IMG/VR virus record: IMGVR_UViG_3300008261_000001
Coordinates: 226,180 to 290,179 of that record
Strand: one strand, 5' to 3'
Length of the DNA: 64,000 bases
Positions within the stretch are counted from its first letter, which is position 1; the number at the start of each line of letters is the position of its first letter. Under the pieces are notes generated by a model. That model searched no databases. It worked only from the letters and a program-made list of their open reading frames with translations, and was not told the origin of the DNA. Of the stretch, positions 40,641 through 55,154 are shown piece after piece. The position numbers and the translations under genes are program-made.

Positions 40641-40647
40641 GAGGCTT

Positions 40648-40857
40648 ATGAGAACCGCCAACGATAAACAAAGACCATTAGACCATTGCACAGGTTGTGG
40701 TAAGAGACTTCCCGAAACAAGGAGAGGTTGGGGGCTTGTTTGGGACGATGGGTCCGGATTTTGTGCAAAATGCTTATACGACATAAGGGTAAAAATAGGA
40801 TACTTTGAGCGTATAGATAAGACCTACGCTCCTAAAAGACGCAAGGATTATAAGTAA
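40648..40857 (+). CDS. Small zinc-finger protein
   Basis: CTGC...CAKC; GAGG RBS. Confidence 0.55.
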   Translation: MRTANDKQRPLDHCTGCGKRLPETRRGWGLVWDDGSGFCAKCLYDIRVKIGYFERIDKTYAPKRRKDYK

Positions 40858-40910
40858 AATGTGGAGTCTCGGTAAGGTATAAAATACATACCTTCTTTAG
40901 AGAGCCCCAC

Positions 40911-41216
40911 ATGACAAAATGGATAACACCCCTAGCTAGTAGTAATCAGATTTACGATGTTGTCTCTTCCATGTTCTCACAGCCCTATGAGAAATCTAGT
41001 CTAAGTCGCTTATCCGTCTTGGGCTTCTCTATCAGTAGAACAGATAGGGGCGTTATCTTAATGAGTAGGGGATTATCCACCTACATAAATGAGGTGACCG
41101 AAAATGAAAACGCCTTGTATGTTGGCTCAGACGGCAGAACATACAAGGCGTTAGAAGAGGCGATTGTGGGGCTATTCGAGCCTCATCTGAGGGCTGAGGT
41201 GTCTAGGAGGCTTTAG
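40911..41216 (+). CDS. Hypothetical protein
   Basis: 101-aa ORF with upstream GGTATAAAA. Confidence 0.55.
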   Translation: MTKWITPLASSNQIYDVVSSMFSQPYEKSSLSRLSVLGFSISRTDRGVILMSRGLSTYINEVTENENALYVGSDGRTYKALEEAIVGLFEPHLRAEVSRRL

Positions 41217-41572
41217 TCCTCGTCAATAATGCTCTCGACCTTAGCGTCTTGAATATTAGCGTCTTGAACCTTCGAGGGTGCTGGCAAGAGCTTCACATCG
41301 AGGGTAGCACCGAACAACTGACGCTTAGAGAGCATACGGATAGTGTCCGAGTCCCACTCCTCGACATTGTAGTAGTCCGTGTCCTCAAAGTCGAACATAT
41401 CCGTATTCGTGAGGGGGAGCTTCAGAGCCTCGATCTTGGAGGGGGCAAAGTCGGTGCGGAGGATCTTGTACTCCCCCTCGTCATCGGACTTGGCTGAAAG
41501 CACAATCCCAAAGGAAAACTGATCCTTGTTCGCTGTGTTTAAGAAAAAGGATAAACCGCGTCTAGGCTTCAT
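41213..41572 (-). CDS. Hypothetical protein
   Basis: GAGG RBS, C-rich third codon positions. Confidence 0.6.
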   Translation of the reverse strand: MKPRRGLSFFLNTANKDQFSFGIVLSAKSDDEGEYKILRTDFAPSKIEALKLPLTNTDMFDFEDTDYYNVEEWDSDTIRMLSKRQLFGATLDVKLLPAPSKVQDANIQDAKVESIIDED

Positions 41573-41669
41573 AAAACCTCGCTCAAGGGTTAAGGGTTCG
41601 TGCTTTTACTTATAGAAAAAGCAGAATCCAACCACCGAAAACTCGAACTTGAAAACTTGTACTTTTTTC

Positions 41670-41696
41670 ATCCCAACCCTCGAAGCTCTATATTAG
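41670..41696 (+). promoter_or_regulatory. ATCCCAAC-N14-ATTAG promoter-like element, copy 1
   Basis: Identical boxes and spacing at 41670, 45886 and 52353. Confidence 0.7.
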
Positions 41697-41730
41697 AGGG
41701 GGCAACCAACAGACACACAAAGGATGTTGC

Positions 41731-42042
41731 ATGGCTACGAAACGCAAGCTCCCCCTCCCCCTCAAGGATCACAACCCCACAGCCGACTCTTTTTGGCAGA
41801 GTCGCCCACGCACCATGTCTTCAGAGCAGGCTTTTTACGCTGTTTATCTGTGGGCGACGAACACATGGAGCTGGCAGGAGTTTTGCCTCAAGGGCGACCC
41901 AGTCCTCTCAGCCCTCAACCCCTTAAGCAAGGATCAAACTAAGCTCTTCCTTGAGGTGACGGACGACTCCCGTTGGGAGTGGGGCGACATCTCTAAGATT
42001 GCAGAGGAGAACTATGCTCGCCTCGTATCTCCCCACCCCTAA
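41731..42042 (+). CDS. Hypothetical protein
   Basis: AAGGA RBS, downstream of the promoter motif. Confidence 0.6.
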   Translation: MATKRKLPLPLKDHNPTADSFWQSRPRTMSSEQAFYAVYLWATNTWSWQEFCLKGDPVLSALNPLSKDQTKLFLEVTDDSRWEWGDISKIAEENYARLVSPHP

Positions 42043-42063
42043 GACCACCAACGACTATGGCAT

Positions 42064-42408
42064 CTAAGGGTTAAGGGGCTTCTGACACCACAAGGTGCGT
42101 ATAGTCTCTAACACCCTATTGCCAAAGTCTTCTGTGTCTTGAGCAATGTGATCGTACTCAAGGATGAACTGAGTTTTTCCATTATATACGCTCACGACTA
42201 GCTCCTCACTATCTGGGTCGAAGTCTGGGTCGTGGTCGGAGCGGAAAACTATTTGCACCCATACAGTGTTCTGTAGGTGCATGGTCAGCAAGGGTAGGCT
42301 TTGGTCTAGGATAAATCCAGCTTCACCGAGCATGAGGGGTAAAGCTCTGATGTAAAAGAGGGGTGTGCAGACCCTCTTTCCATTTTCTATTTTGCTGAAG
42401 TTAGTCAT
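42064..42408 (-). CDS. Hypothetical protein, GKRV family
   Basis: K..NGKRV, E.GF, C-terminal ..R..W like 63228 and 63617. Confidence 0.55.
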   Translation of the reverse strand: MTNFSKIENGKRVCTPLFYIRALPLMLGEAGFILDQSLPLLTMHLQNTVWVQIVFRSDHDPDFDPDSEELVVSVYNGKTQFILEYDHIAQDTEDFGNRVLETIRTLWCQKPLNP

Positions 42409-42694
42409 CTAAGAGCTTTAAGAGGCAGTCATTGAGCCTCTCTCCAGACACGGACTTGTTGTTGAATATAACCACCCAACGATAGTCTTCGAAGGCTAGT
42501 GAAAACACCTCGGGTTGCCGAGATAGCAGAAGGGATAGAAGGCAGCCTGTGTTAGCAGGGTCAAGGGGGTCTATTCCGTTTGGTCTCCACTTTTGAGCGT
42601 CTTGGTTTCCATTAGAGGCTCTCCAAGTTCCATCGAAGTTTTGTTGGTGTACTCTCCACCCATTAGCGTCTAACATACCAGCAAGAAATCTCAT
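42401..42694 (-). CDS. Hypothetical protein
   Basis: DPANTGCLL motif; AGGA RBS. Confidence 0.55.
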   Translation of the reverse strand: MRFLAGMLDANGWRVHQQNFDGTWRASNGNQDAQKWRPNGIDPLDPANTGCLLSLLLSRQPEVFSLAFEDYRWVVIFNNKSVSGERLNDCLLKLLDD

Positions 42695-42721
42695 GGTGTT
42701 TATCCTATTGGTGAGTTTATT

Positions 42722-43393
42722 TTAATAGAAGAGCTTTTTGAGGGCTTGTAGCCCACCAGCTTTCCAAACTTCCCCAGGGTCTTTTCCTCTGTACTTCCAT
42801 TGTACGGATCGGATGCCGATGTCTGTCATTTGCTTGTGTAGCCAAGCTGATTTTTTACGACCTGTTTCATCGTTATCGTAGCAGATATATATAGTGGACA
42901 GAGGCGTGTAAAACTGAGCAATGGTAGCTAGGGTGTTTGAGTCCATACCTGCTCTGAGTGTGGAACACACAGCGTCTGTGGGGGGTATGGATTTCTCGAC
43001 TGCTATAAGGTCAAAAACGCCTTCGACTATCCAAAGGTCGTTTCCCTCCCACAAAGCGTTCAGTGCTTTTTCACTGCCGAGTAGGTAGGGGTTCCATTGG
43101 GATTTTGGTGTTCTGTACTGAAGAACTTTCTTTTGTCCCTCAGCGTCTATGGAACGCACCTCAAGACCGAGTATCTCACCACGGGGGGATGTGATCGGAA
43201 TAATCAGATGGTCTTTGATGCGTTCGCCTAAAGAGCCGAACATGGCTTTGAAGCGTGGGTCTTGGATCTGATCGTGGGGTATCCAAGAGTGAAAGGATAT
43301 TGAAGATTGGCTATCTACACCCCTAGAGGCTAGATAGGGCTTGTAAGCCTCTAGGGGTGAACCGAGTCCTTTTCGTAGCCAACCATCGTCCAT
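42722..43393 (-). CDS. DNA primase catalytic (Toprim) domain protein
   Basis: YLASRG, IIPI, IVEGVFD, CYDNDETG, KDPGE. Confidence 0.88.
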   Translation of the reverse strand: MDDGWLRKGLGSPLEAYKPYLASRGVDSQSSISFHSWIPHDQIQDPRFKAMFGSLGERIKDHLIIPITSPRGEILGLEVRSIDAEGQKKVLQYRTPKSQWNPYLLGSEKALNALWEGNDLWIVEGVFDLIAVEKSIPPTDAVCSTLRAGMDSNTLATIAQFYTPLSTIYICYDNDETGRKKSAWLHKQMTDIGIRSVQWKYRGKDPGEVWKAGGLQALKKLFY

Positions 43394-43396
43394 TTT

Positions 43397-44152
43397 TTAT
43401 CCGTTATTCTGACTAACCGCCCAAGAAGGAGCCTCGGCTTCTCCTTTTTTAACTTTAAGGGCGAGTTCGTATCCCGCTTTATAGACATCGGCTTGAGAGT
43501 TCATTGGTTTTCCTTGAATACCATCTAGATAGCCTTGAACCATCTCTACGGGGGTAGCGGAGGCGGGGGTGCCTGTTCTCATCATAGCCATGTTTTGTAC
43601 TCCTTTATCTGAGCAGGTGACGATTTTATATTGGAAGTAGGTTATCCAATAATCGAGTCTCTTTTTATACCAAGCATCGCAAGTGCCGTTGATACCACTC
43701 TGATGGTGGCACGGATGTAAGTCCTTATCGTCGAACAAAGTTAAGAACTTTTTCATCACTTCGACTGAGTACTTGGTGTTGGGGTTTTTGAGCTTAACGC
43801 ACTCCTTTTGGATAGCGTCTTTATGCTCTTCTGGTTTCCAACCGTTCCAATGCCCCCTAGTGAACTGAGGGTACGAGTACCTAGCGTGTATTTGAAACAC
43901 ACCGCAAGCTCGTCCATTATCTCCTCTGTTCACATTAGGACGGATACGGCTTTCCATCCAAGCGAGAGCGAGAAGTCTGGGGTCTGGGTTTCCATCTTCC
44001 CATGCGTGTTGGAGCAATCGAATCTGATCGGAGTAGTTCGCAGGCTTAGAGTAGTGGAACTTCCAATTTGGTTCGATGTTTACCCGAGACGCATACTGAA
44101 GGGAATCCATCATACAATGGAAAGATAGGGTTAAGATTAAGAGATGAGGCAT
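43397..44152 (-). CDS. SLT/lysozyme-like transglycosylase with in-frame C-terminal small protein
   Basis: LALAWMESR, ACGVFQI; internal AAGGAG-ATG at 43591. Confidence 0.65.
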   Translation of the reverse strand: MPHLLILTLSFHCMMDSLQYASRVNIEPNWKFHYSKPANYSDQIRLLQHAWEDGNPDPRLLALAWMESRIRPNVNRGDNGRACGVFQIHARYSYPQFTRGHWNGWKPEEHKDAIQKECVKLKNPNTKYSVEVMKKFLTLFDDKDLHPCHHQSGINGTCDAWYKKRLDYWITYFQYKIVTCSDKGVQNMAMMRTGTPASATPVEMVQGYLDGIQGKPMNSQADVYKAGYELALKVKKGEAEAPSWAVSQNNG

Positions 44153-44153
44153 C

Positions 44154-44336
44154 TCATTCCTCGTGGGGATTTGGGAGCTTCTCTGATGTATGTGATCGAA
44201 AATGGAAATCCTCACGGGGTACGCGGAGGGGGGTACGCTTCCATATTCCTTTGTATTTCAGTCCGAGCAACACCCCATTTGAGTACTTCTCGGAGCTTGG
44301 ATACATCGTGTCGGCTAGTTGAAAGAGCATAAGCAC
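44154..44336 (-). CDS. Small hypothetical protein
   Basis: 60-aa ORF abutting the RBS of the SLT gene. Confidence 0.35.
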   Translation of the reverse strand: MLMLFQLADTMYPSSEKYSNGVLLGLKYKGIWKRTPLRVPREDFHFRSHTSEKLPNPHEE

Positions 44337-44607
44337 CTTATGGTGAGATAGTCAGGTGCTTATATAAGATATGGGGCATCAACCCCACATCTAGACTAGT
44401 GTTCATCGCTATCTCGAAAAGACTTCGGATAGTCTTCGGATTGTTTAACTCCTTTACGCTGAGATCGGTTGTGGCGGTGTTAAAAAGGGGTTTAGTCTGC
44501 ATCTAACTAGAACCTTGCTTCATTTTAGATTTGACTCCCCTTGATTTATGGTTAATAACCTCGTATCCATTTCATACCCCTACCCCCCCACCATAAGAGA
44601 GTAAAGC

Positions 44608-45231
44608 ATGGATTGTGTTGTGGACTATACCCAAGTGCAACCAACCAAGCGTTGGCATTTGGGTGTGTGTACGATTCTTACATTTAACTTTAAGCAGATT
44701 TCACTTAAAAACAAAAAGAAACTAGGGATAGACATAGACAAAAAGCGTGAAGATATAAGACTTCTCTTTTACAAGAGGCAAGCCAAGCAGGTGGCTCGTT
44801 TGGGGCTAGACCCAGAGGATGTACTTCAAGAGGTCTACAAGGGCTTGATTATCCGCAACGAGGGTACTTGCCCTTACGACCCAAAGAAATCTGCCTTCTC
44901 CACCTATGTTGTCATGGTCATGAACTGCGTAGTCATGAACATCGTCAAAAAGCGTAAGCTCTACAACGATAGAGAGGTTGTCGGTGAAGAGGACGATGCC
45001 GCCACCTATAATGTTGCTTCCCATTATCAGAACCAAGACGAAGAGTTATTACTAGAGCAAGTTCGTGGGTCTTTTAACGGAGATTTGCTTAAGGTATATG
45101 ACGCTCTGATGGAGGGTACAAAACACGCCCATATTGCAAACGAGCTTGGTTGGGAGATTCGTAAGGTGAATATGTGCATTAAAGAGATCAGAACGAAGGT
45201 AGCTAACTACTTGGGGCGGTCTGCGGACTAA
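44608..45231 (+). CDS. Phage sigma70/ECF-like sigma factor
   Basis: EDVLQEV..YDPKKSAFSTYV (region 2), HIANELG HTH (region 4). Confidence 0.8.
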   Translation: MDCVVDYTQVQPTKRWHLGVCTILTFNFKQISLKNKKKLGIDIDKKREDIRLLFYKRQAKQVARLGLDPEDVLQEVYKGLIIRNEGTCPYDPKKSAFSTYVVMVMNCVVMNIVKKRKLYNDREVVGEEDDAATYNVASHYQNQDEELLLEQVRGSFNGDLLKVYDALMEGTKHAHIANELGWEIRKVNMCIKEIRTKVANYLGRSAD

Positions 45232-45818
45232 ACAGAGAACTTGTAAAGCCCAAAGACCCTCCTCGAAACAGGTAGGTATCCAAAACCTGGGTCTATAGAA
45301 GTACCTTGTGTGATCTGCTGTCCAAGCTCGTCTATCTTCATGTTAAAAGTAGCCCTCTCTGCTTTATTCGAATCAGACCCTACACCAAAAGTGGAAATCT
45401 CTTCGATATTGTCAGCCCAAGCCATAAGATAAATACTGCCCTCAAAAGGTTCACCCTTAAAGTCGGTTCTAAGCCCGTAAGCGAACACAGGTATCTGTAG
45501 TTCGTCTGCAATACGAGTAAGACCCAAGACTTGGTCTTTACTCAAGAACTGAGCCTCATCCACGAATAAGACTTTGATGGGTTTATCCAATACTGCTAGG
45601 TAGGGACATTCTGAGGAGCTTAAGGATTGAGCCTTCTGTGTGAAGCCGATGCGGGAAGCGACTTTGGATACTTCGTCTCTCTGTGAAGCGACATGAGGCA
45701 CTAAGACCTCGTATGGGATTTCTCGCTCAAAGCATGAGTGAGCCCTCATGATAAGGTTGGCACTCTTACCAGCGTTGACGGTGGAGTAGATGAAGGTGAG
45801 CATCGTTTTTCTTTCCAT
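45228..45818 (-). CDS. tdk: Thymidine kinase (type II), zinc ligands lost
   Basis: YSTVNAGKS, SRIG, VDEAQF, YGLRTDFKGEPFEGS. Confidence 0.92.
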   Translation of the reverse strand: MERKTMLTFIYSTVNAGKSANLIMRAHSCFEREIPYEVLVPHVASQRDEVSKVASRIGFTQKAQSLSSSECPYLAVLDKPIKVLFVDEAQFLSKDQVLGLTRIADELQIPVFAYGLRTDFKGEPFEGSIYLMAWADNIEEISTFGVGSDSNKAERATFNMKIDELGQQITQGTSIDPGFGYLPVSRRVFGLYKFSV

Positions 45819-45885
45819 TTCTAGTTTTCTTACCTTTATACACCTCCAGCACTTATGTGAAATAAAGATTATCCGAAAAAAGATT

Positions 45886-45912
45886 ATCCCAACTCGTGAT
45901 GTTCTCTATTAG
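45886..45912 (+). promoter_or_regulatory. ATCCCAAC-N14-ATTAG promoter-like element, copy 2
   Basis: Exact box match and spacing. Confidence 0.7.
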
Positions 45913-45947
45913 GGGGGTGTACACACCCACACCACAGAGAGAACACC

Positions 45948-46523
45948 ATGACCAAGCTCGACATCCTCAACATCATCATCAAGCTCCTTGTCCTCGACAA
46001 CGCAGTCGGGCTCGACAACCCTAAGGTCAAGACGCACCTGGACGCGGTCGCCACCGCCATCCATGCCGAGGCTGGTGAGGTTCCCGCCTCACGCCTCATC
46101 AGCCTCGCTTATAACGAGTCTCGATTTGGATATAAAGAGATCAAGCTCGACTCTTACCCCACCACCTCGTGGGGGGCTTGTGGCATCTATCAGCAGGTGG
46201 CGAAGTTCTCCACCATCCCCACCACCTGCCACAAGCTGGGGACAGATGTTCGTCACGCCACGAAGGTGGCTGTGGCTTACCTCAAGTACATGAAGGGTCG
46301 GTGGAAGGTCACGACCTCCACCGAGAAGATGGACGACCTCATGTGCCACTACTACAGCGGAAACACCTGTGATCGAGAGGCTAAGGCTTACGCCAAGAGG
46401 CATAAGAAAATCCGCGAGAAGGCGAGCGAGCTTCTAGCTTCTAAGGCTAAGGGGCTGAAGAAGCCTAAGTCTAAGGGGCTGATGGTAGCTTCTCGTAAGG
46501 GGCTTCCCCCTCGCACCATCTAA
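45948..46523 (+). CDS. SLT-like lytic transglycosylase with N-terminal hydrophobic segment
   Basis: LISLAYNESR, GACGIYQ, YLK, HYYSG. Confidence 0.65.
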   Translation: MTKLDILNIIIKLLVLDNAVGLDNPKVKTHLDAVATAIHAEAGEVPASRLISLAYNESRFGYKEIKLDSYPTTSWGACGIYQQVAKFSTIPTTCHKLGTDVRHATKVAVAYLKYMKGRWKVTTSTEKMDDLMCHYYSGNTCDREAKAYAKRHKKIREKASELLASKAKGLKKPKSKGLMVASRKGLPPRTI

Positions 46524-46536
46524 GAGGAGTGTACAC

Positions 46537-47058
46537 ATGAAGATACATAGCAATGCGGGTATCACTCATTGGTCTAAAGAGATCGAGGACGACACCCTCT
46601 TAGGTTCCCTAGAAATGGGTCTAGGGGAGGATGGCAAGAGGGTGGTGGTTTCTTGGAAAGAGGGGGAATCTGCCTTCAAGGTCTTCGGATCTTGGTTCTT
46701 GCAGATGGGGCTACAAGACTTAATCTTGATCGTTAATGGGACATACGATTGTCGTGTGAACACCCTAGAGGGTGGTACACACAAAGGCGAGGGGGGTATG
46801 GTACTGAGGGTAGAGTGGTCTACAGGGAACGACCCAGATAGGAATGTGATCGTTTATAACGACTTGAAGGATAAGGAAAGCTACACGGGTCATAACTTTC
46901 AGAAGCAAGAGGGGTATCTGAGGGTTGTACTTATCCGTGGTACTCAGGTACATCTTGGGACATGGGGTGGAGGTTATCCGACTGCTGATTTTGGGGCTTT
47001 AGGTTCTCATATGAACTCTATAATGGATTGGATTAGGTATATCTACAAAGCCAACTGA
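46537..47058 (+). CDS. Hypothetical protein
   Basis: GAGGAG RBS. Confidence 0.6.
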   Translation: MKIHSNAGITHWSKEIEDDTLLGSLEMGLGEDGKRVVVSWKEGESAFKVFGSWFLQMGLQDLILIVNGTYDCRVNTLEGGTHKGEGGMVLRVEWSTGNDPDRNVIVYNDLKDKESYTGHNFQKQEGYLRVVLIRGTQVHLGTWGGGYPTADFGALGSHMNSIMDWIRYIYKAN

Positions 47059-47069
47059 GGAGGGCTTTA

Positions 47070-48281
47070 ATGTTTGAGTATGACAGAGAAAAGGGCTTCA
47101 AGACACTTGCGGAGTACAAGCTGTTTGAGGACGGAGAAATCTACATACCACCGCATATATGGAAAGAGATTAAGGATCAGTTCCCTCGTGATGAGGTGAT
47201 ACTACACTTATCCAATCTTTTGAGGGCTATGCCTTTTCCTTTGACGCAGTATTCGGCGGCGGAGGTTCTATCCGATTGGAACAGCTTGAAGAACACCCCT
47301 CAAAATGTCGAGATGACTGAATGGACTTGTCATAGGTTGTTCGACAGTATTCCCCTTCTGTACCGAGGAAAGCCTTGCCTTATCCAATCTAACACGAAGG
47401 GCAGAAAGGTATCCAATCAGTTTACTGAGTCTGTTAGGATGGAGTGTGGTTCAAAAGCATTTCCATCCCCTATTTCGTACTGGACGGAAAACAAGGTCAT
47501 GTATTGGCTCAGATCTCTTTGGACTCTCTTAGACGATAAAGAGGGGTTAAACGGAAGGAGTATTCAACAATGCATCGCCTTAAGTTCTTATGTGGCGAGT
47601 CAGTTTAATCCTAGCACAGCTAAGTGCATTTATGACTTCTTTGGGGCTAAGAAGGTCTTGGACTTATCTATGGGTTGGGGGGATAGACTCGTAGGGTTTC
47701 TAGCTAGTGGTGCGGATAGTTATGTGGGCATAGACCCCAACACTAAGCTCCACACGCCCTATCAGAGCATCTGCGATTGGACAGAGAACAAGGGGGGCTT
47801 GGATAAGCCTAAAACGACTCGGTTCATCTGTTCACCTGCTGAGGAGGCGGACTTATCCAATATGAAGTTCGACTTTGTGTTTACCTCGCCTCCGTACTTC
47901 AACATAGAGAGGTACTCCGAGGATGGAACACAGAGCTGGAAACGCTATAAGCAGTTATCCGCTTGGCATGAGGGCTTTTTGTTCCCGTCTTTGAAGAAGG
48001 CTTGGGACAGCTTAGAGGAGGGCGGTCGGATAGCCATCAACATCGCAGACAGCTTGAGAGATAAGCATAACATCTGTACGCCCATGTTATCCTATATGGA
48101 GTCGATAGGTGCAACTTACGAGGGTGTTATGGGGTATCGTATGTCTAAGCGACCTGGGAACTTTTCTCAGTACACGGATGATATAAAAGAGATCGGTGTG
48201 TTTGGTGAGCCGATATTTATATGGAGTAAGGGGGAAGCCCCTGAGCCCAAGTGGAACCAAGATAACTTCTTTGGAGTCTGA
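47070..48281 (+). CDS. SAM-dependent DNA amino-methyltransferase-fold protein, copy 1
   Basis: VLDLSMGWGDRL (motif I), YVGIDPN, FTSPPYF (motif IV). Confidence 0.88.
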   Translation: MFEYDREKGFKTLAEYKLFEDGEIYIPPHIWKEIKDQFPRDEVILHLSNLLRAMPFPLTQYSAAEVLSDWNSLKNTPQNVEMTEWTCHRLFDSIPLLYRGKPCLIQSNTKGRKVSNQFTESVRMECGSKAFPSPISYWTENKVMYWLRSLWTLLDDKEGLNGRSIQQCIALSSYVASQFNPSTAKCIYDFFGAKKVLDLSMGWGDRLVGFLASGADSYVGIDPNTKLHTPYQSICDWTENKGGLDKPKTTRFICSPAEEADLSNMKFDFVFTSPPYFNIERYSEDGTQSWKRYKQLSAWHEGFLFPSLKKAWDSLEEGGRIAINIADSLRDKHNICTPMLSYMESIGATYEGVMGYRMSKRPGNFSQYTDDIKEIGVFGEPIFIWSKGEAPEPKWNQDNFFGV

Positions 48282-48991
48282 TGATGTACCATATAACAGC
48301 AAAAAATTGTGCAGAGGCATGGGTGAAAGCCACACAAGATATTCTCGACAAAGGGGAGGATATGGGGGGGTTGTACGAGATATTAAATATGGGGATAGAG
48401 ATAACCTCTTCTGAAGTGTGTCCTTTGTTTGACGAGGAGTTTCGTAAGGTTTTTGGGGACGAGAGAATAGACTATGCGAAGTCTGTGACTTTCGTGCGTC
48501 CTGAGCCTAATGTGCTTTTCCCTCAAATGATGGATTATAGACAGAACCAAGAAGGGAAATGGACTAATAGTTATTGGGGTCGTATGATCTCTTGGAACGG
48601 TGGATATAATCAGATAGAGCAGGCGATAAAGAGGCTTCAACAAAACAAGCAGTCTAAAACCATCGTCATTGGTGTTTTCGATCCTCAGACGGATGGGAAA
48701 AAACAAATGGGTGGTATGCCCTGCTTACTGACAATAGACTTAAAGCCTAGAGGTGGGAAGCTCAATCTCACAGCAAACTTTAGAAGCCAAGCGGTATCTA
48801 AGTCTGGCTATGCCGATTATATGGCGTTAGTAGAGTTGTGTGATTTCTTGTGCAAAGAGAGCGGTTGTCTCGACTTTGGACTTGTCACTTCATTCGCTCA
48901 CTCTTGCCATGTACGCACCGAAAACAACGAGCTGAAAAACTCAAAGCGACTTATGGAGCAGTATGGAAACCGAATGGGTGAACTCGTTTAA
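48281..48991 (+). CDS. Thymidylate-synthase-family enzyme, dCMP-hydroxymethylase-like
   Basis: YWGR, MPCL (catalytic Cys), FRSQ, GYAD (Asp at the specificity position), HSCHV. Confidence 0.8.
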   Translation: MMYHITAKNCAEAWVKATQDILDKGEDMGGLYEILNMGIEITSSEVCPLFDEEFRKVFGDERIDYAKSVTFVRPEPNVLFPQMMDYRQNQEGKWTNSYWGRMISWNGGYNQIEQAIKRLQQNKQSKTIVIGVFDPQTDGKKQMGGMPCLLTIDLKPRGGKLNLTANFRSQAVSKSGYADYMALVELCDFLCKESGCLDFGLVTSFAHSCHVRTENNELKNSKRLMEQYGNRMGELV

Positions 48992-49883
48992 GACACTCAT
49001 CTATGAGTCGATAAAATCGTTACCTGACGAGGTGAGCTTGTCTTTTAGCGGAGGTATTGACTCCTCTATGATCTTATTCACTATGATTGATTTAGGGAAG
49101 CCCCCCAAAGAACTCATCACATTTGAGATAGAGGGAGAGCCGTCTAAAGATTTAGAATATGCTAAAAAGATTGCACAGCATTACGATCTGCCTTTGAAGG
49201 TTGCGAAGATCCCATCTTCTCCGAGTCGTGACGACTTATTAGGGGAAGTTAAAGAAGTTATTAAGACCACACGCACCACGAGGAACATTGAAACTCAAGT
49301 GTGCTACGCATATTCCTACATGATACCCCTTATTACAACAGAGCATCTGGTCACAGGGTTTTACGAAGACATACTGTTCGCCACGAATGCAAACATCTCT
49401 TCAAAGTACAGCAAACACCTTAAAGGTTTAATGTCCAAAGAGGATTTTGATGATGAATATAAACTGATTAGAAAACAAGTATTTGAGGGGAAATACAAAT
49501 CTGGTGCGGAACACAACTACCTTGTGATTATGAGGTACTTGGAGGCGAAAGGCATTAAAGTAGAATGTCCTTATAATACGGATTGTATATACAATTTATT
49601 TCAATCCCTCACTTTTAAACAAACGAACTATAATCCCAATACAGGTAAGAAACATAAAAAGTGGTTCATCACAGAAGAAACGCATAAAGATTTTTTTGCT
49701 CTGTTCAATAACCATAAAAACATCAATAATATGCACACAACAGGTAAAGATGGCGGGCTTAAAGGTCTACATAGGCGTGTGTTATTAACAGGGACATCTT
49801 TTAAGGACACAAGGGCTATTTATAACGAGGTACTGAAAGAAATTGAGTTTGAAGAAAAGGCTATGTTCGATGTTAAACTTTAA
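48963..49883 (+). CDS. Asparagine-synthetase-like PP-loop ATP pyrophosphatase, no glutaminase domain
   Basis: SFSGGIDSS, DLEYAKKIA, VTGFYEDILF, ECPY, KWF. Confidence 0.8.
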   Translation: METEWVNSFKTLIYESIKSLPDEVSLSFSGGIDSSMILFTMIDLGKPPKELITFEIEGEPSKDLEYAKKIAQHYDLPLKVAKIPSSPSRDDLLGEVKEVIKTTRTTRNIETQVCYAYSYMIPLITTEHLVTGFYEDILFATNANISSKYSKHLKGLMSKEDFDDEYKLIRKQVFEGKYKSGAEHNYLVIMRYLEAKGIKVECPYNTDCIYNLFQSLTFKQTNYNPNTGKKHKKWFITEETHKDFFALFNNHKNINNMHTTGKDGGLKGLHRRVLLTGTSFKDTRAIYNEVLKEIEFEEKAMFDVKL

Positions 49884-50703
49884 TACGCCTTTAGAGACTT
49901 ACACTGTGGCTCACAAAAACATAGATGTGAAGCGAGATGACTTGCTTAATGGAGACCTCGATCTGCCTCCGTGGGCTAAACTTGAAGGGGTTCGCAGACT
50001 GCTCGAATCGGATTACTATAAGAAGGATAAACCGATTGTGCATCTGACCGTTAGGGGGAGTTACACAGGGTGGGTGTTGTCTTATTGGGGGAAACAAATG
50101 GGGTACGACATAAAGATTGCTTACCCTAACACAAAAAACTACGGACAAGTTATGCTCGATAAGATCACCCAGTATGGCGGAGAACTTATCCCTCTTAAAC
50201 ACAACATGGTAGCTGTTCTTTCGGCACAAACTAAAAAAATGGCTTCTGAAAATGATTGGCAGATGAGCCCAGACGCTTTTAATCATCCGATCTATATAGA
50301 CTATTGGACACAACGCTCGACTGAGTTTTTCAAAGAAAACGAGTACGATACTCTTGTCGTACAAGGAGGGAGTGGAGTCACATCTGTTGGACTCATCAAA
50401 GGGTTTTTAGGTGTGGATTACATCTCAGGGTCTCTATTTGAATCGGATTACGGAAAGAAGAAAATCGTCCTCGTGGCTACCTCAAGTGTTAAGACCGTCA
50501 CAAACGCTCTGATCTCTAATCTAGGTGCTGTGCCTTCTTGTCTCAAGGTCTATAAGTCTGAGTACGACTTTTACGATGAAATGGAACACCTAACGACCCC
50601 ATTCCCTTGCAACCCTTATTGGGACAAGAAAGCGTGGGGCTGGATTCAAGATAACCCAGATAAGATGAAAGGTCGTACCCTGTTTTGGAATCTAGGAGCT
50701 TAA
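49870..50703 (+). CDS. PLP-dependent fold-type-II enzyme
   Basis: NTPLE, VKRDDL, AKL (Schiff-base Lys), GGSGVTSVG, YWDKKAW, LFWNLG. Confidence 0.82.
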   Translation: MLNFNTPLETYTVAHKNIDVKRDDLLNGDLDLPPWAKLEGVRRLLESDYYKKDKPIVHLTVRGSYTGWVLSYWGKQMGYDIKIAYPNTKNYGQVMLDKITQYGGELIPLKHNMVAVLSAQTKKMASENDWQMSPDAFNHPIYIDYWTQRSTEFFKENEYDTLVVQGGSGVTSVGLIKGFLGVDYISGSLFESDYGKKKIVLVATSSVKTVTNALISNLGAVPSCLKVYKSEYDFYDEMEHLTTPFPCNPYWDKKAWGWIQDNPDKMKGRTLFWNLGA

Positions 50704-50724
50704 ACCTTTTTTCGGGGTCTAGTT

Positions 50725-51945
50725 ATGTTTTTTGATTATGAGCGAACAAAGTTATCTTCTCTAGATGACTATGAACTGACGACCGACTCTAAGATTTCTA
50801 TTCCTCCCCACATATGGCGTGAGATTACAACGACTTTCAGTAAGAAAGATATCATTGAACATCTGTCCAATCTTATTGAAGTGGGGAAACTCCCTTTTCC
50901 GCTGAGGGAGTACTCATCAGCGGGGTTGGATCTTGACTTCAAGATGCTGAAAAACGAGGATTGCTTAGTAAAGCTAGGTGATTGGGAGTGCCTAAGGACA
51001 ATCCCCAACCAAGAGCTGAGTTATCGTGGGCGTAGGTGTTATTTTAACCCTTCTTCTAATGGATTAAGCGTTTCGGATAACTTCACTCAGCTTGAAAGGA
51101 TGGAGTGTTCTCACTTTGAACATAAGAGTCCAATGAGGGAATGGACGAGGGAAGGTTGTAGGTCAAAGACACGCTATATGCTGAGGGTCTTATGGACACT
51201 TAACGAGAAGGACGCTTTAGAGAACGGTGTTAGCAATAAGCAGTTAAGAGACTGCATACGGCTTGGAAACTACCAAGCAAGTCAGTTCAAGCCCTCATGT
51301 GCTAAGACGATTTATGACTTCTTTGGGGCTAAGAAGGTCTTGGACTTTTCAGCAGGTTGGGGGGACAGACTCGTTGGCTTCCTAGCGTCTAGTGCCGAGA
51401 GCTATGTGGGCATAGATCCTAACTCAAAACTAACGGATAAGTATAGAGCCATATCTAGCTTTTGCTCTACGGATAAACAGACAAGTTTCATCTGCTCCCC
51501 CGCAGAAGACGCTGACTTATCCAATATGAGATTCGACTTTGTGTTTACCTCCCCCCCTTACTTCAACATCGAGAGGTATTCAGAGGAGAGTACTCAGTCT
51601 TGGAAACGCTATAAGACGGAGAGCGACTGGTTGGAGTTTTTCTTGTTGGTCGCTTTAAAGAAATCTTGGGACAGCTTAGAAGACGGTGGGAGGATAGCTA
51701 TCAACATCGCGGATAAGGGTCATTCAAGGACAGATGTCATTTCTTCTATCTGTACGCCTATGCTGTCTTATATGGAGTCTTTAGGTGCGGTGTTTGAGGG
51801 GGTGATAGGATATAGGATGAATAAAAGACCTGGTGACAGAATGGGTTCTGTAGGTGGTTCGGTGTTCGGTGAACCTATATTCGTGTGGTCTAAAGGTGTT
51901 GCCACCGAACCCAAGTGGAAGCAAGACAACTTCTTTGGGATCTGA
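50725..51945 (+). CDS. SAM-dependent DNA amino-methyltransferase-fold protein, copy 2
   Basis: VLDFSAGWGDRL, FTSPPYF; collinear paralogue of 47070..48281. Confidence 0.88.
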   Translation: MFFDYERTKLSSLDDYELTTDSKISIPPHIWREITTTFSKKDIIEHLSNLIEVGKLPFPLREYSSAGLDLDFKMLKNEDCLVKLGDWECLRTIPNQELSYRGRRCYFNPSSNGLSVSDNFTQLERMECSHFEHKSPMREWTREGCRSKTRYMLRVLWTLNEKDALENGVSNKQLRDCIRLGNYQASQFKPSCAKTIYDFFGAKKVLDFSAGWGDRLVGFLASSAESYVGIDPNSKLTDKYRAISSFCSTDKQTSFICSPAEDADLSNMRFDFVFTSPPYFNIERYSEESTQSWKRYKTESDWLEFFLLVALKKSWDSLEDGGRIAINIADKGHSRTDVISSICTPMLSYMESLGAVFEGVIGYRMNKRPGDRMGSVGGSVFGEPIFVWSKGVATEPKWKQDNFFGI

Positions 51946-51949
51946 GCGT

Positions 51950-52273
51950 TTAACTATTCACGATGAAGTTAAACTGAGGCAACATCTGAGCGATCTTTTG
52001 AAGGCAATCGCTATCCGACCCACAAGAGACATAAATCTCTTTCATAGATCCAGCGTTTGAAGTTTCGGTCTTGTACCCTGCCTTCATGATAGTTCTCTCA
52101 ATAGTCGTAGCATCCCATGACGCTACGATGAGATTTAAGTCGTTCATACCCTCAAAGTTCACAAGCACAGGAGCTTTGACCTTATGGATGTTTCGTGAGG
52201 CAACCTTACGACCACCTTCGAGGGCGGCGAGGCGGACTTCAAGACTTCTTAATACTTCACTTGCTGTTCTCAT
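51950..52273 (-). CDS. Small protein with MRTASEVLR leader
   Basis: Leader and RBS shared with 2390..3505. Confidence 0.65.
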   Translation of the reverse strand: MRTASEVLRSLEVRLAALEGGRKVASRNIHKVKAPVLVNFEGMNDLNLIVASWDATTIERTIMKAGYKTETSNAGSMKEIYVSCGSDSDCLQKIAQMLPQFNFIVNS

Positions 52274-52352
52274 GTCATTACTCCAAGATGGGGGGTGGTA
52301 TGTTAGGTGGTTATTCCACCTATCCAAGACTACAGATTATAAACCTTTTATT

Positions 52353-52379
52353 ATCCCAACTCTAAGAGTAGCTCATTAG
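52353..52379 (+). promoter_or_regulatory. ATCCCAAC-N14-ATTAG promoter-like element, copy 3
   Basis: Exact box match and spacing. Confidence 0.7.
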
Positions 52380-52412
52380 TGGGCTAGAACCCCACAAGCT
52401 AGGAGACAGAAT

Positions 52413-52637
52413 ATGATTATCAAAGGACTCGACCCCAAGTTTTACGGAGAGAACGAGGTTGAAAACAGCCTCTCCCTTATCTACCCCCGCCTCACCCCCC
52501 GCGAAGCATTGCTTGAAGCCGTGGACGATTGGAACCGACTCAACGCTCGGAAAATCCCCCCAATGATGAAGGGCATGACGGCTTATGAGAAGTGCCTCAT
52601 ATTAGATACCCTGTTCGACCAACTTAACGAGTTTTAA
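52413..52637 (+). CDS. Hypothetical protein
   Basis: AGGAG RBS. Confidence 0.6.
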   Translation: MIIKGLDPKFYGENEVENSLSLIYPRLTPREALLEAVDDWNRLNARKIPPMMKGMTAYEKCLILDTLFDQLNEF

Positions 52638-52705
52638 GAAAAACCCTTTACATCTCAAGCCTTTTCTGCTAAAGGGCTGGCGACTATCTAAATAGGAGCT
52701 TTGAG

Positions 52706-52795
52706 ATGTGCAATCTAACCCTATGGGCGGTGCTCTCTGTAATATATGGCTGGTATGTAGTGGAGGCGTACAAGTCGTACAAGGGAAAGCACTAG
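52706..52795 (+). CDS. Putative 29-aa membrane peptide
   Basis: AGGAG RBS; MCNLTLWAVLSVIYGWYVVEAYKSYKGKH. Confidence 0.45.
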   Translation: MCNLTLWAVLSVIYGWYVVEAYKSYKGKH

Positions 52796-52829
52796 GAGGG
52801 GTGAGCTAGTAGGAGGGGTGAGCTAGTAG
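52793..52829 (+). repeat. 17-bp tandem duplication
   Basis: taggaggggtgagctag twice, then tag. Confidence 0.85.
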
Positions 52830-52871
52830 ATTGTTTATGAGCCAAACACCTACAAGAAAGGTGCGTGGCTC

Positions 52872-53258
52872 ATGAAGAAATCTTCTGCTCAACTGAAAGA
52901 GATTTTATCCAATATGGACGAGGATATTATTTCCAAGTCGAGGGACTTGGTGTCCTCGGTGGTGGGTTCGTTCGAGGAACAGCTTTTAAAAAGCCCTTTA
53001 ACTTTTAGGGTTGGGGACTACGAGGTTTTGGTGGAGGCGAAGAGCGGAAGTCTTAGTGGTGGGGATTTGGATATTTATCTGTCGTGTAGCTGTGGTTATT
53101 GGCAGTATCAGGGACCAGAATATCACGCTAAACAAAATGGATACTTGTTTGGTAAAGCGAGGGGTACGGCTGAGAAGCCTACGAGTAAAGACCCCAACGG
53201 TACACATAAGCTATGTAAGCACTCTTATGTTGTACTTAAAGACTATTTTGGAGCTTGA
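52872..53258 (+). CDS. SWIM-type zinc-finger protein
   Basis: CSC..W...CKH. Confidence 0.7.
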   Translation: MKKSSAQLKEILSNMDEDIISKSRDLVSSVVGSFEEQLLKSPLTFRVGDYEVLVEAKSGSLSGGDLDIYLSCSCGYWQYQGPEYHAKQNGYLFGKARGTAEKPTSKDPNGTHKLCKHSYVVLKDYFGA

Positions 53259-53260
53259 TT

Positions 53261-53641
53261 ATGCCAACCTATGATTTCTCATGTACCTCTTGCGAGGCTC
53301 ACTACACCAAATCCCTTCGTATGTCTGAGCGTGACTCAGAGACTCGTTGTCCTGAGTGTGGAGACTTAGGGCGTAGGGTTCCCTCTTTACCTCAGTTCAT
53401 CCTTGTGGGTGATGGGTGGACAGGTAAGAACCTTAGGGTGAAGCAGCAGATGCAAGAGAAGAACAACAAGCTAGAGACACGGCAGAATGAAATGAAGCGT
53501 GATGCTCCCGCAGTGACTCTTGCACCGAATGTGGATGGGGAGAGGGTGGACTCTTGGTCTGACGCACAAAAGCTCGCCAAGTCAAAGGGCAAGAACGCAG
53601 ATAGCTACAACGCACTCGTGCAGAAAGAGCAGGCTAAATAA
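53261..53641 (+). CDS. FmdB-family zinc-ribbon protein
   Basis: MPTYDFSCTSC..CPECG..FILVGDGW. Confidence 0.8.
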   Translation: MPTYDFSCTSCEAHYTKSLRMSERDSETRCPECGDLGRRVPSLPQFILVGDGWTGKNLRVKQQMQEKNNKLETRQNEMKRDAPAVTLAPNVDGERVDSWSDAQKLAKSKGKNADSYNALVQKEQAK

Positions 53642-54351
53642 TGTCTAGGGGTCGCTTAATACCAAGCCTTAACTATCGCTCCAAAGGACTGATAGATGTC
53701 TCTATACCGAATGCCTCATTAAGGGGTATGGACGAGATAAGGGTTTATGGAGCGTCAAATCTAAATGACGCTTTCAACAACCCCTTAGAAATCTTACGCA
53801 CTAAGTACGATGTGAACTTTAAGAGTTCGTCTATTTTATCTCAGCGGTTGAGGGTCGAGGAGAGCAATAGAGACTTAACTCGTATGGTTTTTAACCTCAA
53901 CGACTTCTCTACAGCACCTGCAAACCCTCGTATCCCAACTGACGAAGAGGTGTGTTTTATCCGACTGAGGGGTCGCATGAAGGCTACTGGGGAGCTTACT
54001 GACTTTGGTCCTGTGGTCGTAGTCGTACCCTATGACTTCTTTAGCGTGACTGCACCCATATTTACGGTTGTAGGTACTGCACCGGACATAAACTCTGGTG
54101 GGGTACCAGATAACTTGGGTATTGGATCTATGAATATCCATTTACCTTACTTCAGTCAGACGATAAGCGTTCAGAATCTAGACGATACGGACAGCTTGTA
54201 TGTGTCTTGTGCTCCAGGAATGAGTCCAACGATTATTCGCCCCTTGGATACTTTGGGCATAACGGGTGGTGCAGTGCCTGAGTTCTTTTTAGCTGGTGAT
54301 GGAGCGACTCCTCAGTTCACCATAAGGGCGAGTCTTGTAAATAGAGGTTAA
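53641..54351 (+). CDS. Hypothetical, probably structural protein
   Basis: Beta-rich 236-aa ORF in the late cluster. Confidence 0.5.
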   Translation: MSRGRLIPSLNYRSKGLIDVSIPNASLRGMDEIRVYGASNLNDAFNNPLEILRTKYDVNFKSSSILSQRLRVEESNRDLTRMVFNLNDFSTAPANPRIPTDEEVCFIRLRGRMKATGELTDFGPVVVVVPYDFFSVTAPIFTVVGTAPDINSGGVPDNLGIGSMNIHLPYFSQTISVQNLDDTDSLYVSCAPGMSPTIIRPLDTLGITGGAVPEFFLAGDGATPQFTIRASLVNRG

Positions 54352-54371
54352 TAATGGATAAGTGGTGTTAA

Positions 54372-54387: not shown

Positions 54388-54435
54388 ACAAGGCGTATTG
54401 TTAACGGATAACGATAACCCTCTAGGAGAGACAAT

Positions 54436-55143: not shown

Positions 55144-55154
55144 GGAGTCTAACC

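What the first reader, a model, noticed from the sequence alone, without database searches (positions are those of the whole stretch)
41670..52379. Second promoter class: ATCCCAAC-N14-ATTAG, three exact copies
Seen: identical 8-nt and 5-nt boxes with an exact 14-nt variable spacer at 41670, 45886 and 52353. Each lies about 33-35 nt before an ATG, and the downstream genes favour C-ending codons unlike the structural genes. Copy 2 heads the run of + strand genes that contains the modification cluster. Known: bipartite AAC-containing -35 boxes are typical of ECF sigma promoters. Inference: an early/middle regulon read by an ECF-type sigma.
Basis: partly seen in the sequence, partly recalled or inferred. 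Interest (0 to 1): 0.6.

Follow-up and report, generated by a model that had tools for sequence, protein, structure and literature searches.

The report
Jumbo-phage early promoter class, sigma-type
The three repeats are real members of a family of about 30 near-identical two-box promoters in an uncultured 290-kb freshwater phage. They are probably read by the host RNA polymerase carrying the phage's own small sigma factor, which is a known strategy with a new sigma and motif.

Summary
Observation confirmed and extended. ATCCCAAC-N14-ATTAG occurs three times in the window, with none expected by chance. The window is the end of a 290,179-bp IMG/VR jumbo-phage record that holds 30 sites of TCCCAA-N15-ATTA.

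All 30 sites point at the next gene, mostly 29-58 nt before its start. The spacing is fixed. Each site has an A/T-rich tract upstream, a G-run downstream and a T-poor leader. The general consensus is TTATCCCAA[G>C>A]-N12-(C)TT-ATTAG-N-GGGG. The 'AAC' seen in the window is therefore not general.

Relatives whose sigma is 68-83% identical keep the boxes and the spacing while spacers and flanks differ. Relatives at about 50% identity carry other motifs at orthologous positions.

The first genes behind these sites are C-ending and A3-poor (C3 0.41 against 0.25, p 5e-13). The phage's 13 tRNAs mostly read A-ending codons. Together these fit an early class.

The gene at 44608-45231 is the only sigma-like gene. 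It is a divergent two-domain ECF-type sigma, modelled to dock on beta-prime clamp helices, and it sits behind a conserved TTGAC-type host promoter. No phage RNA polymerase was detected.

That this sigma reads this class is inferred, not shown, because no RNA data exist. Verdict: real promoters (about 0.9); sigma assignment about 0.55; a new member of a known kind.

The parts
41670..41696 (+). Class A promoter copy 1 (ATCCCAAC-N14-ATTAG). An A/T-rich tract lies upstream and AGGGGG follows.
   Evidence: The site is identical in the relative whose sigma is 83% identical (L261:960). In two lake metagenomes the 71 nt upstream are replaced, and likeness resumes exactly at 41670.
41731..42042 (+). 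First gene behind copy 1 (103 aa, no family match). C3 0.41, A3 0.11.
44531..44558 (+). Host sigma-70-type promoter candidate of the sigma gene: TTGACT, 16 nt, TAATAA.
   Evidence: A TTGAC[A/T] box stands at the same place before the sigma gene in at least 9 relatives whose sigma is 37-77% identical.
44608..45231 (+). Phage sigma factor, 207 aa, ECF-type architecture (sigma-2 plus sigma-4) with an N-terminal extension of about 55 aa. It is the only sigma-like gene of the genome.
   Evidence: PF04542 E 0.0036. phrog_1740 'RNA polymerase sigma factor' E 2.9e-6. TIGR02937 E 2.6e-6 over residues 56-202, model positions 15-165 of 165, below the cut-off. AlphaFold2 model pLDDT 78.6. Top Foldseek hits are SigH, sigma-E, SigW and AlgU. 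No paralogue in the genome. Docking on beta-prime residues 271-298 scored 0.72 against a best control of 0.00.
45886..45912 (+). Class A promoter copy 2. It heads the 7-gene + run that contains the base-modification cluster.
   Evidence: The orthologous site in L261 keeps both boxes with 2 changes in the spacer. In L126 (sigma 77% identical) the first box is kept and the second reads ATTAA.
45948..46523 (+). First gene behind copy 2 (191 aa). C3 0.43, A3 0.06. It is conserved in G004, G005 and G007, where it is preceded by each lineage's own motif.
46537..51945 (+). Six further genes of the run: two N6/N4-methylase-like, one thymidylate-synthase-like, one Asn-synthase/PP-loop-like, one PLP enzyme and one unknown. 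Their codon usage is ordinary.
52353..52379 (+). Class A promoter copy 3. It heads a run of 19 + strand genes (52413-62152).
52413..52637 (+). First gene behind copy 3 (74 aa). C3 0.44.

Best explanation
The three sites belong to a genome-wide class of about 30 strong early or middle promoters of an uncultured freshwater jumbo phage. I propose that the bacterial host's multisubunit RNA polymerase core reads them when it carries the phage's own ECF-type sigma (window 44608-45231). Proposed order of events (inferred): the host sigma-70 holoenzyme transcribes the sigma gene from its TTGACT-N16-TAATAA promoter. The new sigma docks on the beta-prime clamp helices. Its region 4 then reads TCCCAA (the -35 place) and its region 2 reads the ATTAG block 14-15 nt downstream. 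The A/T tract upstream would serve as an UP-like contact for the alpha subunit. Transcription would start about 6-9 nt after ATTAG, in or just after the G-run. This gives T-poor, A/C-rich leaders of about 40 nt and a first gene written in C-ending codons that host tRNAs can read. Shown here: the motif, its spacing, orientation and conservation, the codon class, the sigma fold, and the absence of a detectable phage RNA polymerase. Inferred: which factor reads the sites, which box is -35 and which is -10, the start site and the timing.
For: The motif is real. There are 3 exact copies against 0 expected, and 26-30 sites in the genome against 0 in the reversed control. The spacing is fixed. All 30 sites face the next gene, and in 26 of them ATTAG ends 29-58 nt before my crude start call. 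The 21 nt upstream are 72% A+T, against 57% for intergenic DNA in general, and the column pattern is A-run, T-run, A-run.

The boxes and spacing persist in relatives while spacers and flanks change. G001-G003 have 9, 5 and 9 sites with 0 in the control. L261 and L259 keep them, with TTCCCAA replacing ATCCCAA at 68% sigma identity. The motif is absent at or below 53% sigma identity. There, orthologous genes carry other motifs with the same codon signature.

The sigma has both domains and is the only sigma-like gene. Region 2 is nearly invariant across the family, while the region-4 recognition helix varies between lineages. Docking on beta-prime clamp helices scored 0.72 against a best control of 0.00. 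That mark was reached by 51 of 78 solved complexes and 2 of 108 mismatched pairs. The runs agree in at least 85% of contacts and the partner pLDDT is at least 81. The pass may reflect likeness to solved sigma-core complexes rather than binding by this copy.

A TTGAC-type box is conserved before the sigma gene in at least 9 relatives. No T7-type RNA polymerase was found, and the T7 positive control matched. No beta-prime domain or DFDGD motif was found.

There is precedent. Phage 7-11 sigma gp47, which has region 4, reads a bipartite GTAAtg-N16-aCTA. The phiEco32 sigma gp36, which lacks region 4, reads a single element (PMC8948821). ECF promoters adhere closely to consensus and use spacers of 14-17 bp (PMC5758882).
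Against: There is no transcript data, so no start site and no dependence on the sigma is shown. The sigma's family scores lie below the curated cut-offs. The ECF hallmark AAC is present in only 9 of 30 sites.

The sigma gene itself has ordinary codon usage (C3 0.26), not that of the early class. This is odd for a protein that must be made first.

A second promoter-like class, TTTATA (often preceded by TAATAG), stands co-oriented in about 55 upstream regions. It is better conserved across lineages than class A, as is sigma region 2, so the sigma could read that class instead.

The downstream boxes also differ between lineages (ATTAG, ATATAAG, CTATAG) although sigma region 2 hardly changes. In G005 the equivalent motif is a contiguous block of about 20 nt, which looks more like a phage-polymerase promoter.

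The co-divergence of motif and sigma follows phylogeny, so it would be seen for any lineage-specific factor.
Confidence: 0.55

Rival explanations
1. The sites are promoters read by host core polymerase, but through a different specificity factor. This could be a host alternative sigma or an unrecognised phage protein, possibly delivered with the DNA. The sigma at 44608 would then serve the TTTATA class (middle or late), as T4 gp55 or phiEco32 gp36 serve single-element promoters.
For: The codon bias and the tRNA set suggest that class A genes are the very first to be expressed. That is hard to reconcile with a need to make a sigma first. The sigma gene has no early-type codon bias. The TTTATA class and sigma region 2 are both conserved across lineages. 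phiEco32 shows that a phage sigma can read a single element (PMC8948821). A 423-aa multi-HTH protein in the early region (genome 55270-56541, - strand) also sits behind a sigma-70-like promoter, TTGACA-N16-TATAAG.
Against: The sigma keeps a conserved region-4 helix-turn-helix in every homologue, including distant ones. In the 7-11 and phiEco32 pair, presence of region 4 goes with bipartite promoters (PMC8948821). The TTTATA class has no conserved box at the -35 place. No other sigma was found, and no MotA or AsiA homologue (which lacked a positive control). The multi-HTH protein has no homologue in the relatives, including those that share the motif, although those records are fragments. The pattern is not multiplied in any bacterial genome stretch scanned.
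Confidence: 0.25
2. The sites are promoters of an unrecognised phage-encoded RNA polymerase, single-subunit or highly divergent and possibly packaged in the virion. Transcripts would start at the G-run, as in T7-type GGG starts.
For: The block CTTATTAG-N-GGGG and the semi-conserved first transcribed bases resemble phage-polymerase promoters. The equivalent motif in G005 is contiguous and ends in CTATAG. The genome has giant ORFs with no family match, such as the 2898-aa ORF next to the early region. Sigma-70-like promoters are very few.
Against: PF00940 is absent from G000, G001, G004, G005 and G007, while the T7 control matches at 1e-109. There is no beta-prime domain or catalytic DFDGD motif. 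A conserved box about 30 nt upstream with a variable 12-nt gap, together with an UP-like A/T tract, does not fit a T7-type footprint. A conserved sigma implies use of a bacterial core enzyme.
Confidence: 0.08
3. The repeat is not primarily a promoter. It could be an RNA-level 5'-leader signal or a DNA hairpin (as in N4-type promoters), or the boundary of mobile gene cassettes.
For: C-rich bases before ATTAG and the G-run after it can pair. Folding energy is -6.7 against -5.7 kcal/mol for spacer shuffles, p 0.005. In lake populations, likeness breaks exactly at the upstream edge of copies 1 and 2, as at the promoter/stem-loop cassettes of T4-type phages.
Against: There is no covariation in any of four pairing registers (permutation p 0.16-0.65). 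The relative G001 has non-complementary bases there. Two boxes at fixed distance, an upstream A/T tract and strict co-orientation with genes are DNA-level promoter features. Cassette boundaries at promoters are compatible with the promoter reading.
Confidence: 0.05

Closest known systems
Late promoters of Salmonella phage 7-11 read by host core plus phage sigma gp47 (GTAAtg-N16-aCTA); phiEco32 gp36 as the single-element counterpart (PMC8948821)
   Same: A phage-encoded, very divergent sigma-70-family protein with region 4 is paired with a near-invariant bipartite motif scattered before operons. The sigma gene is first reached by host sigma-70 transcription. Starts lie 6-9 bp from the motif, which is the same prediction made here.
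   Different: There is no sequence likeness in either the sigma or the motif. The spacing differs (14-15 against 16). Here there are about 30 sites in a 290-kb myovirus-like jumbo phage, and they serve early or middle genes rather than late structural genes. A further single-element class coexists. Nothing here has been tested at the bench.
Bacterial ECF (group 4) sigma promoters: AAC in -35, short group-specific -10, spacer 14-17 bp (PMC5758882)
   Same: The sigma has two domains. The promoters are bipartite, adhere closely to consensus and have a fixed short spacer within the reported range.
   Different: AAC is not conserved: the box is CCCAA followed by G, C or A. The -10 block ATTAG plus G-run is unlike CGT-type elements. 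There is no autoregulatory site before the sigma gene, and no anti-sigma was identified. Family scores are below the curated cut-offs.
Bacillus phage SPO1 gp28 middle promoters and the T7 host-to-phage switch (own knowledge, not checked here)
   Same: A few host-type promoters express one phage specificity factor, which then redirects transcription to many phage-specific promoters before replication and nucleotide-modification genes.
   Different: The proteins and motifs are unrelated. T7 uses its own polymerase.
T4 middle promoters (MotA box at about -30 plus sigma-70 -10, with AsiA)
   Same: If TATTAG is taken as the -10 element, a conserved box lies centred near -30, about 13 bp upstream of it. 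This is an early-to-middle switch.
   Different: The -10-like hexamer ends in G in 24 of 30 sites instead of the required T. No MotA C-terminal domain or AsiA family match was found.
Promoter-early stem-loop cassettes of T4-type phages (own knowledge)
   Same: Many small early genes each have their own strong promoter. Population variants break at the promoter edges.
   Different: There is no supported stem-loop, and the promoters are not of the sigma-70 type.

Membership tests
Sigma-dependent bipartite bacterial-type promoter | Two conserved boxes at a fixed distance compatible with sigma-4 and sigma-2 reach | tested here: met
ATCCCAA and ATTAG pair 24 times at N15, twice at N16 and never at N12-14 or N17-18.
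Sigma-dependent bipartite bacterial-type promoter | Located upstream of genes and co-oriented with them | tested here: met
   All 30 sites face the next gene. In 26 of them ATTAG ends 29-58 nt before the called start (the other four: 4, 5, 58 and 86 nt). Six touch the end of a called ORF, and three of those ORFs are doubtful at 36-62 aa. The gene calls are my own crude ones.
Sigma-dependent bipartite bacterial-type promoter | Transcripts start a few nt downstream of the -10 box | not testable with these tools
   No RNA run holds the phage. All holders are DNA contigs.
Sigma-dependent bipartite bacterial-type promoter | Transcription depends on the cognate sigma | not testable with these tools
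   This needs a reporter or in vitro transcription. Only co-occurrence and co-divergence were seen.
ECF-type promoter | Conserved AAC in the -35 box | tested here: not met
   The base after CCCAA is G in 15, C in 9 and A in 6 of 30 sites. AA is invariant.
ECF (group 4) sigma factor (protein 44608-45231) | Only regions 2 and 4 are present, both folded | tested here: met
   The protein is 207 aa. The TIGR02937 alignment covers residues 56-202. The model has helices at 47-124 and 143-202. Foldseek aligns 160-190 columns with SigH, sigma-E, SigW and AlgU; TM scores are low because the two domains are hinged.
ECF (group 4) sigma factor (protein 44608-45231) | Scores above curated family cut-offs | tested here: not met
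   TIGR02937 scored 27.2 bits against a cut-off of 42.9. PF04542 scored 17.5 bits against 24.
ECF (group 4) sigma factor (protein 44608-45231) | Region 2.2 docks on the beta-prime clamp helices | tested here: met
   Complex prediction scored 0.72 against a best control of 0.00. That mark was reached by 51 of 78 solved complexes and 2 of 108 mismatched pairs. Sigma residues 66-85 contact E. coli beta-prime 271-298. The runs agree in at least 85% of contacts and the partner pLDDT is at least 81. The pass may come from likeness to solved complexes, and the true host is unknown.
ECF (group 4) sigma factor (protein 44608-45231) | Autoregulatory promoter before the sigma gene and an adjacent anti-sigma | tested here: not met
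   No class A site stands before the sigma gene. The upstream region carries a TTGAC-type box instead. The neighbouring genes were not examined for an anti-sigma.
T7-type single-subunit polymerase promoter | A single-subunit polymerase gene is present | tested here: not met
   PF00940 is absent from G000 and four relatives. The T7 control matched at 9.9e-110.
T7-type single-subunit polymerase promoter | A contiguous conserved block of about 20 bp ending at the start site | tested here: inconclusive
   In G000 a 12-nt weakly conserved gap separates the boxes. The equivalent motif in G005 is contiguous.
T4 middle promoter (MotA/AsiA) | A sigma-70 -10 element (TAnnnT) plus MotA and AsiA genes | tested here: not met
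   The last base of TATTAG is G in 24 of 30 sites. PF09158 and PF09010 gave no match, but without a positive control.
N4-type hairpin promoter | A conserved DNA hairpin supported by compensatory changes | tested here: not met
   Four pairing registers were tested, with permutation p of 0.16-0.65.

The most novel reading that the evidence does not exclude
A large clade of uncultured huge phages (contigs up to 618 kb) carries one conserved two-domain sigma whose region-4 helix has diversified together with lineage-specific early promoters. The motifs are ATCCCAA..ATTAG here, TTCCCAA..ATTAG at 68% sigma identity, a GTAACCCC..CTATAG block in G005 and C-run..ATATAAG in G004. This would be a natural set of orthogonal sigma/promoter pairs. 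In each lineage the promoter also marks genes recoded into host-readable C-ending codons, while the rest of the genome leans on phage tRNAs for A-ending codons.
Probability: 0.35. Interest if true: 0.65.

Novelty: new member of a known kind. Interest (0 to 1): 0.45.

Why it matters
It gives a concrete, testable transcription programme for a widespread but uncultured freshwater jumbo phage, which is present in metagenomes of 16 studies. The programme has three parts: a handful of host-type promoters, one phage sigma, and about 30 dedicated promoters.

Because the sigma family is shared by many huge phages while the motifs differ, it could supply orthogonal sigma/promoter pairs. It is also a clean system for studying how promoter specificity evolves.

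The tight link between promoter class, first-gene codon usage and the phage tRNA set is a ready-made test of the idea that phage tRNAs serve later genes. Otherwise the mechanism is a familiar one.

Tried and rejected
- **Hairpin around ATTAG (C-run pairing with G-run).** The energy gain is small and there is no covariation. Rejected.
- **T7-type polymerase, beta-prime domain and DFDGD motif.** None found.
- **Giant ORFs as a virion polymerase.** PHROGs and PDB sequence searches gave only structural or no matches. Left open; no folds were made.
- **MotA and AsiA.** No match, but the searches had no positive control.
- **The 423-aa multi-HTH early protein as activator.** No homologue in the relatives. 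Not pursued.
- **Collection scans with the motif.** With 14 specified bases the scan gave only chance single hits. With 17 bases it gave six single hits, and one of them (L125) is another fragment of the same phage. The genome-contig scan gave only chance-level single hits.
- **Phage-collection searches.** Megablast of the region against cultured-phage records found nothing. tblastn of the sigma found one unannotated 485-kb uncultured phage only.
- **Canonical sigma-70 promoter scan.** 8 hits, 7 of them inside genes. The tool's scan of 40500-54500 found fewer than its shuffles (13 against 19.5).
- **RNA evidence.** None exists. Read laying could use DNA contigs only.
- **Region-4-less homologues as a natural test.** None exist; all keep the helix-turn-helix.
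- **Host identity.** Not determined.


Full report
**1. The observation**

The pattern ATCCCAAC-N14-ATTAG matches at 41670, 45886 and 52353, all on the + strand. None of 100 dinucleotide-preserving shuffles gave a match. With 3 mismatches allowed the pattern dissolves into background: 28 found against 18 expected. An alignment of the three regions shows that only the two boxes, a G-run after ATTAG and the ATG are shared. ATTAG ends 33-35 nt before the ATGs at 41731, 45948 and 52413.

**2. Genome-wide picture**

The window is bases 226180-290179 of a 290,179-bp IMG/VR virus record, which CheckV rates 93% complete.
- The record has 7 exact and 19 one-mismatch sites. The reversed pattern gives none.
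- The core TCCCAA-N15-ATTA gives 30 sites.
- The two boxes co-occur 24 times at N15, twice at N16 and never at N12-14 or N17-18.
- The column counts give the consensus TTATCCCAA[G15/C9/A6][T/C]..(C-rich)..TT-ATTAG-[T/G/A]-GGGG.
- The 21 nt upstream are 72% A+T, against 57% for intergenic DNA, and run as an A-run, a T-run and an A-run.
- The leaders down to the start codon contain 11% T, against 23.5% before other genes. Their median length is about 41 nt, and their first bases are semi-conserved (GGGGACAGCGA.. or GGGGCAACC..).
- All 30 sites face the next gene of my own crude gene calls. Fifteen crowd into 38-61 kb among small divergent genes.

This is a promoter class.

**3. Other promoter-like classes**

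A single-element class TTTATA stands co-oriented in about 55 upstream regions. In its best copies it is preceded by TAATAG four or five bases upstream. These regions include those of the DNA polymerase, a UvrD-like helicase and structural genes. Five sites lie inside the 19-gene run behind copy 3.

Canonical sigma-70 promoters are nearly absent. Two exceptions stand out: TTGACT-N16-TAATAA before the sigma gene, and TTGACA-N16-TATAAG before a 423-aa multi-HTH protein.

**4. The sigma**

The gene at 44608-45231 is the only sigma-like gene.
- It scores weakly against Sigma70_r2, phrog_1740 and TIGR02937. The last of these aligns end to end, including region 4.
- Forty-six homologues exist, all from metagenomic contigs. 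None is from a cultured phage.
- The family alignment shows a nearly invariant region 2 and a C-terminal helix-turn-helix whose recognition helix differs between lineages.
- The AlphaFold2 model (pLDDT 78.6) has the two helical bundles. Its best Foldseek matches are ECF sigmas: SigH, sigma-E, SigW, AlgU, SigK and CnrH.
- A complex test of residues 40-128 with E. coli beta-prime 230-345 scored 0.72 against a best control of 0.00. That mark was reached by 51 of 78 solved complexes and 2 of 108 mismatched pairs. The runs agree in at least 85% of contacts and the partner pLDDT is at least 81. Sigma residues 66-85 lie on beta-prime 271-298. This shows likeness to known sigma-core interfaces; it does not prove that this copy binds.
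- Before the sigma gene, a TTGAC[A/T] box about 70-80 nt from the start codon recurs in at least nine relatives whose sigma is 37-77% identical. I read the sigma as a host-transcribed early gene.

**5. No phage polymerase detected**

PF00940 is absent from this genome and four relatives, while T7 matched at 9.9e-110 as a control. No beta-prime domain and no catalytic DFDGD motif were found. The giant ORFs gave tail-fibre, sheath, structural or no matches.

**6. Relatives**

- Contigs whose sigma is 77% identical hold 9, 5 and 9 sites with the same boxes and spacing but other spacers.
- A contig at 83% keeps the orthologous copies 1 and 2, with 2 changes in the spacer of copy 2.
- A contig at 68% has four sites reading TTCCCAA-N15-ATTAG.
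- Five records at 37-53% have only chance-level matches.
- In G004 (sigma 49%, 297 kb) about 13 sites read A-tract, C-run, then ATT[C/G]ATATAAGT.
- In G005 (sigma 51%, 376 kb) 57 sites read YGTAACCCCTTATCTATAG.
- The 191-aa first gene behind copy 2 has orthologues in G004 and G005, and each is preceded by that lineage's own motif.

The classes are therefore functionally equivalent and have diverged. All distant homologues keep region 4.

**7. Codon class and tRNAs**

The first genes behind the 30 sites have C3 of 0.41 and A3 of 0.11. The other 308 genes have 0.25 and 0.22 (Mann-Whitney p 5e-13). The bias is mostly limited to the first gene, or to the first few small genes. The modification genes behind copy 2 are ordinary.

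The same bias follows the G005 motif (p 4e-16) and the G004 motif (A3 p 2e-4). It does not follow the TAATAG..TTTAT class.

The phage encodes 13 tRNAs, mostly for A-ending codons: GAA, AGA, GGA, GUA, UUA, AAA and ACA. I infer that class A genes are expressed early and strongly on host tRNAs. The sigma gene itself does not share the bias, which counts mildly against the proposed order of events.

**8. Mechanism and rivals**

The best reading is host core plus the phage sigma. TCCCAA would be the -35 box, the ATTAG block the -10 region and the A/T tract an UP-like element, with starts 6-9 nt after ATTAG.

It rests on five points:
- the geometry of the boxes;
- the presence and conservation of region 4;
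- the only-sigma argument;
- the absence of a detectable phage polymerase;
- the precedent of phage 7-11, where a sigma with region 4 reads a bipartite motif, while the phiEco32 sigma without region 4 reads a single element (PMC8948821).

The ECF literature reports spacers of 14-17 bp and close adherence to consensus (PMC5758882).

The main rival is that the sigma serves the TTTATA class and another factor reads class A. This cannot be excluded without transcripts. A hairpin reading was tested and rejected.

**9. Population data**

DNA contigs of four lake and water metagenomes were laid on 41400-47300.
- In two runs the 71 nt before copy 1 are replaced by 74 other letters, and likeness resumes exactly at 41670.
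- In one run likeness breaks at 45814 and resumes at 45884, two bases before copy 2.
- The G-run after copy 1 varies in length.
- None of the 40 listed substitutions lies in the boxes. A further 99 were not shown, so this point is weak.

**10. Verdict**

The finding is a new member of a known kind, namely a phage sigma-directed promoter regulon. The promoter-linked codon class, and the motif diversification across a clade of huge phages, are worth follow-up.

Noticed in passing
whole genome; in the window e.g. 45835-45840 (+), 54382 (+), 56995 (+), 57405 (+), 58118 (+), 61089 (+), 8773 (+), 52338-52343 (-): A second promoter-like class. TTTATA, often preceded by TAATAG four or five bases upstream, stands co-oriented in about 55 upstream regions, 40-65 nt before start codons. 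These include the regions of the DNA polymerase, a UvrD-like helicase and structural genes. A like motif (TAATAG-N-TTATCA or TTTAT) is present in G004 and G005. The reading factor is unknown.
   Followed up: partly
genome 183147-197282 (11 tRNAs); window 6657-6729 (-) Lys(ttt) and 7092-7165 (-) Thr(tgt): There are thirteen phage tRNA genes, mostly for A-ending codons. These are the codons avoided by the first genes behind class A promoters (A3 0.11 against 0.22).
   Followed up: partly
window 45948-46523 against 46537-51945; genome-wide table: The C-ending codon bias stops after the first gene, or the first few small genes, of each class A unit, even where the next gene starts 13 nt later. Either the first genes form a separately selected set or transcription is attenuated. 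This is unexplained.
   Followed up: partly
window 41599-41669 and 45815-45883: In other lake populations the DNA just upstream of copies 1 and 2 is replaced by unrelated sequence, and likeness resumes at the promoter's first bases. A 16-nt duplication of the decoy AAGATTATCCGA lies before copy 2 in one run. This suggests cassette-like exchange at promoter edges.
   Followed up: no
window 46537-51945 with 45228-45818 (-): A base-modification cluster: thymidylate-synthase-like (probably a pyrimidine hydroxymethylase), PP-loop/Asn-synthase-like, a PLP enzyme and two 400-aa N6/N4-methylase-like proteins, next to a thymidine kinase. The same cluster is present in the relative L261. It suggests a hypermodified pyrimidine in the phage DNA.
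   Followed up: no
genome 55270-56541 (-) and its paralogue 40943-41776 (+) (L154:15270-16541 and L154:943-1776): A 423-aa protein built of repeated helix-turn-helix units (HTH_23, sigma-70 region-4-like) sits behind one of the very few sigma-70-like promoters (TTGACA-N16-TATAAG). It has no homologue in the relatives searched.
   Followed up: partly
genome 128841-131516 (-) (L158:10841-13516): The ribonucleotide reductase large subunit is interrupted by a LAGLIDADG domain, probably an intein.
   Followed up: no
genome 149748, 150403, 159534, 21958, 224968 (leaders after TTTATA): Several TTTATA sites share a conserved leader of about 50 nt (CTCCAAGATAGGGGATAGGTT..AACCCTTAACCCAACCCC). It may be a repeated 5' UTR of highly expressed late genes.
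   Followed up: no
L187-L210 (sigma homologues on contigs of 200-618 kb): Distant members of the sigma family carry an extra conserved N-terminal domain of 100-200 aa (motif YFAR.EHGGH.V) that is absent from the 207-aa protein here.
   Followed up: no
genome 28001-36697 (-) (L153:8001-16697): A 2898-aa ORF beside the early region has no PHROG or PDB sequence match. Its function is unknown, and a virion-delivered enzyme is not excluded.
   Followed up: partly
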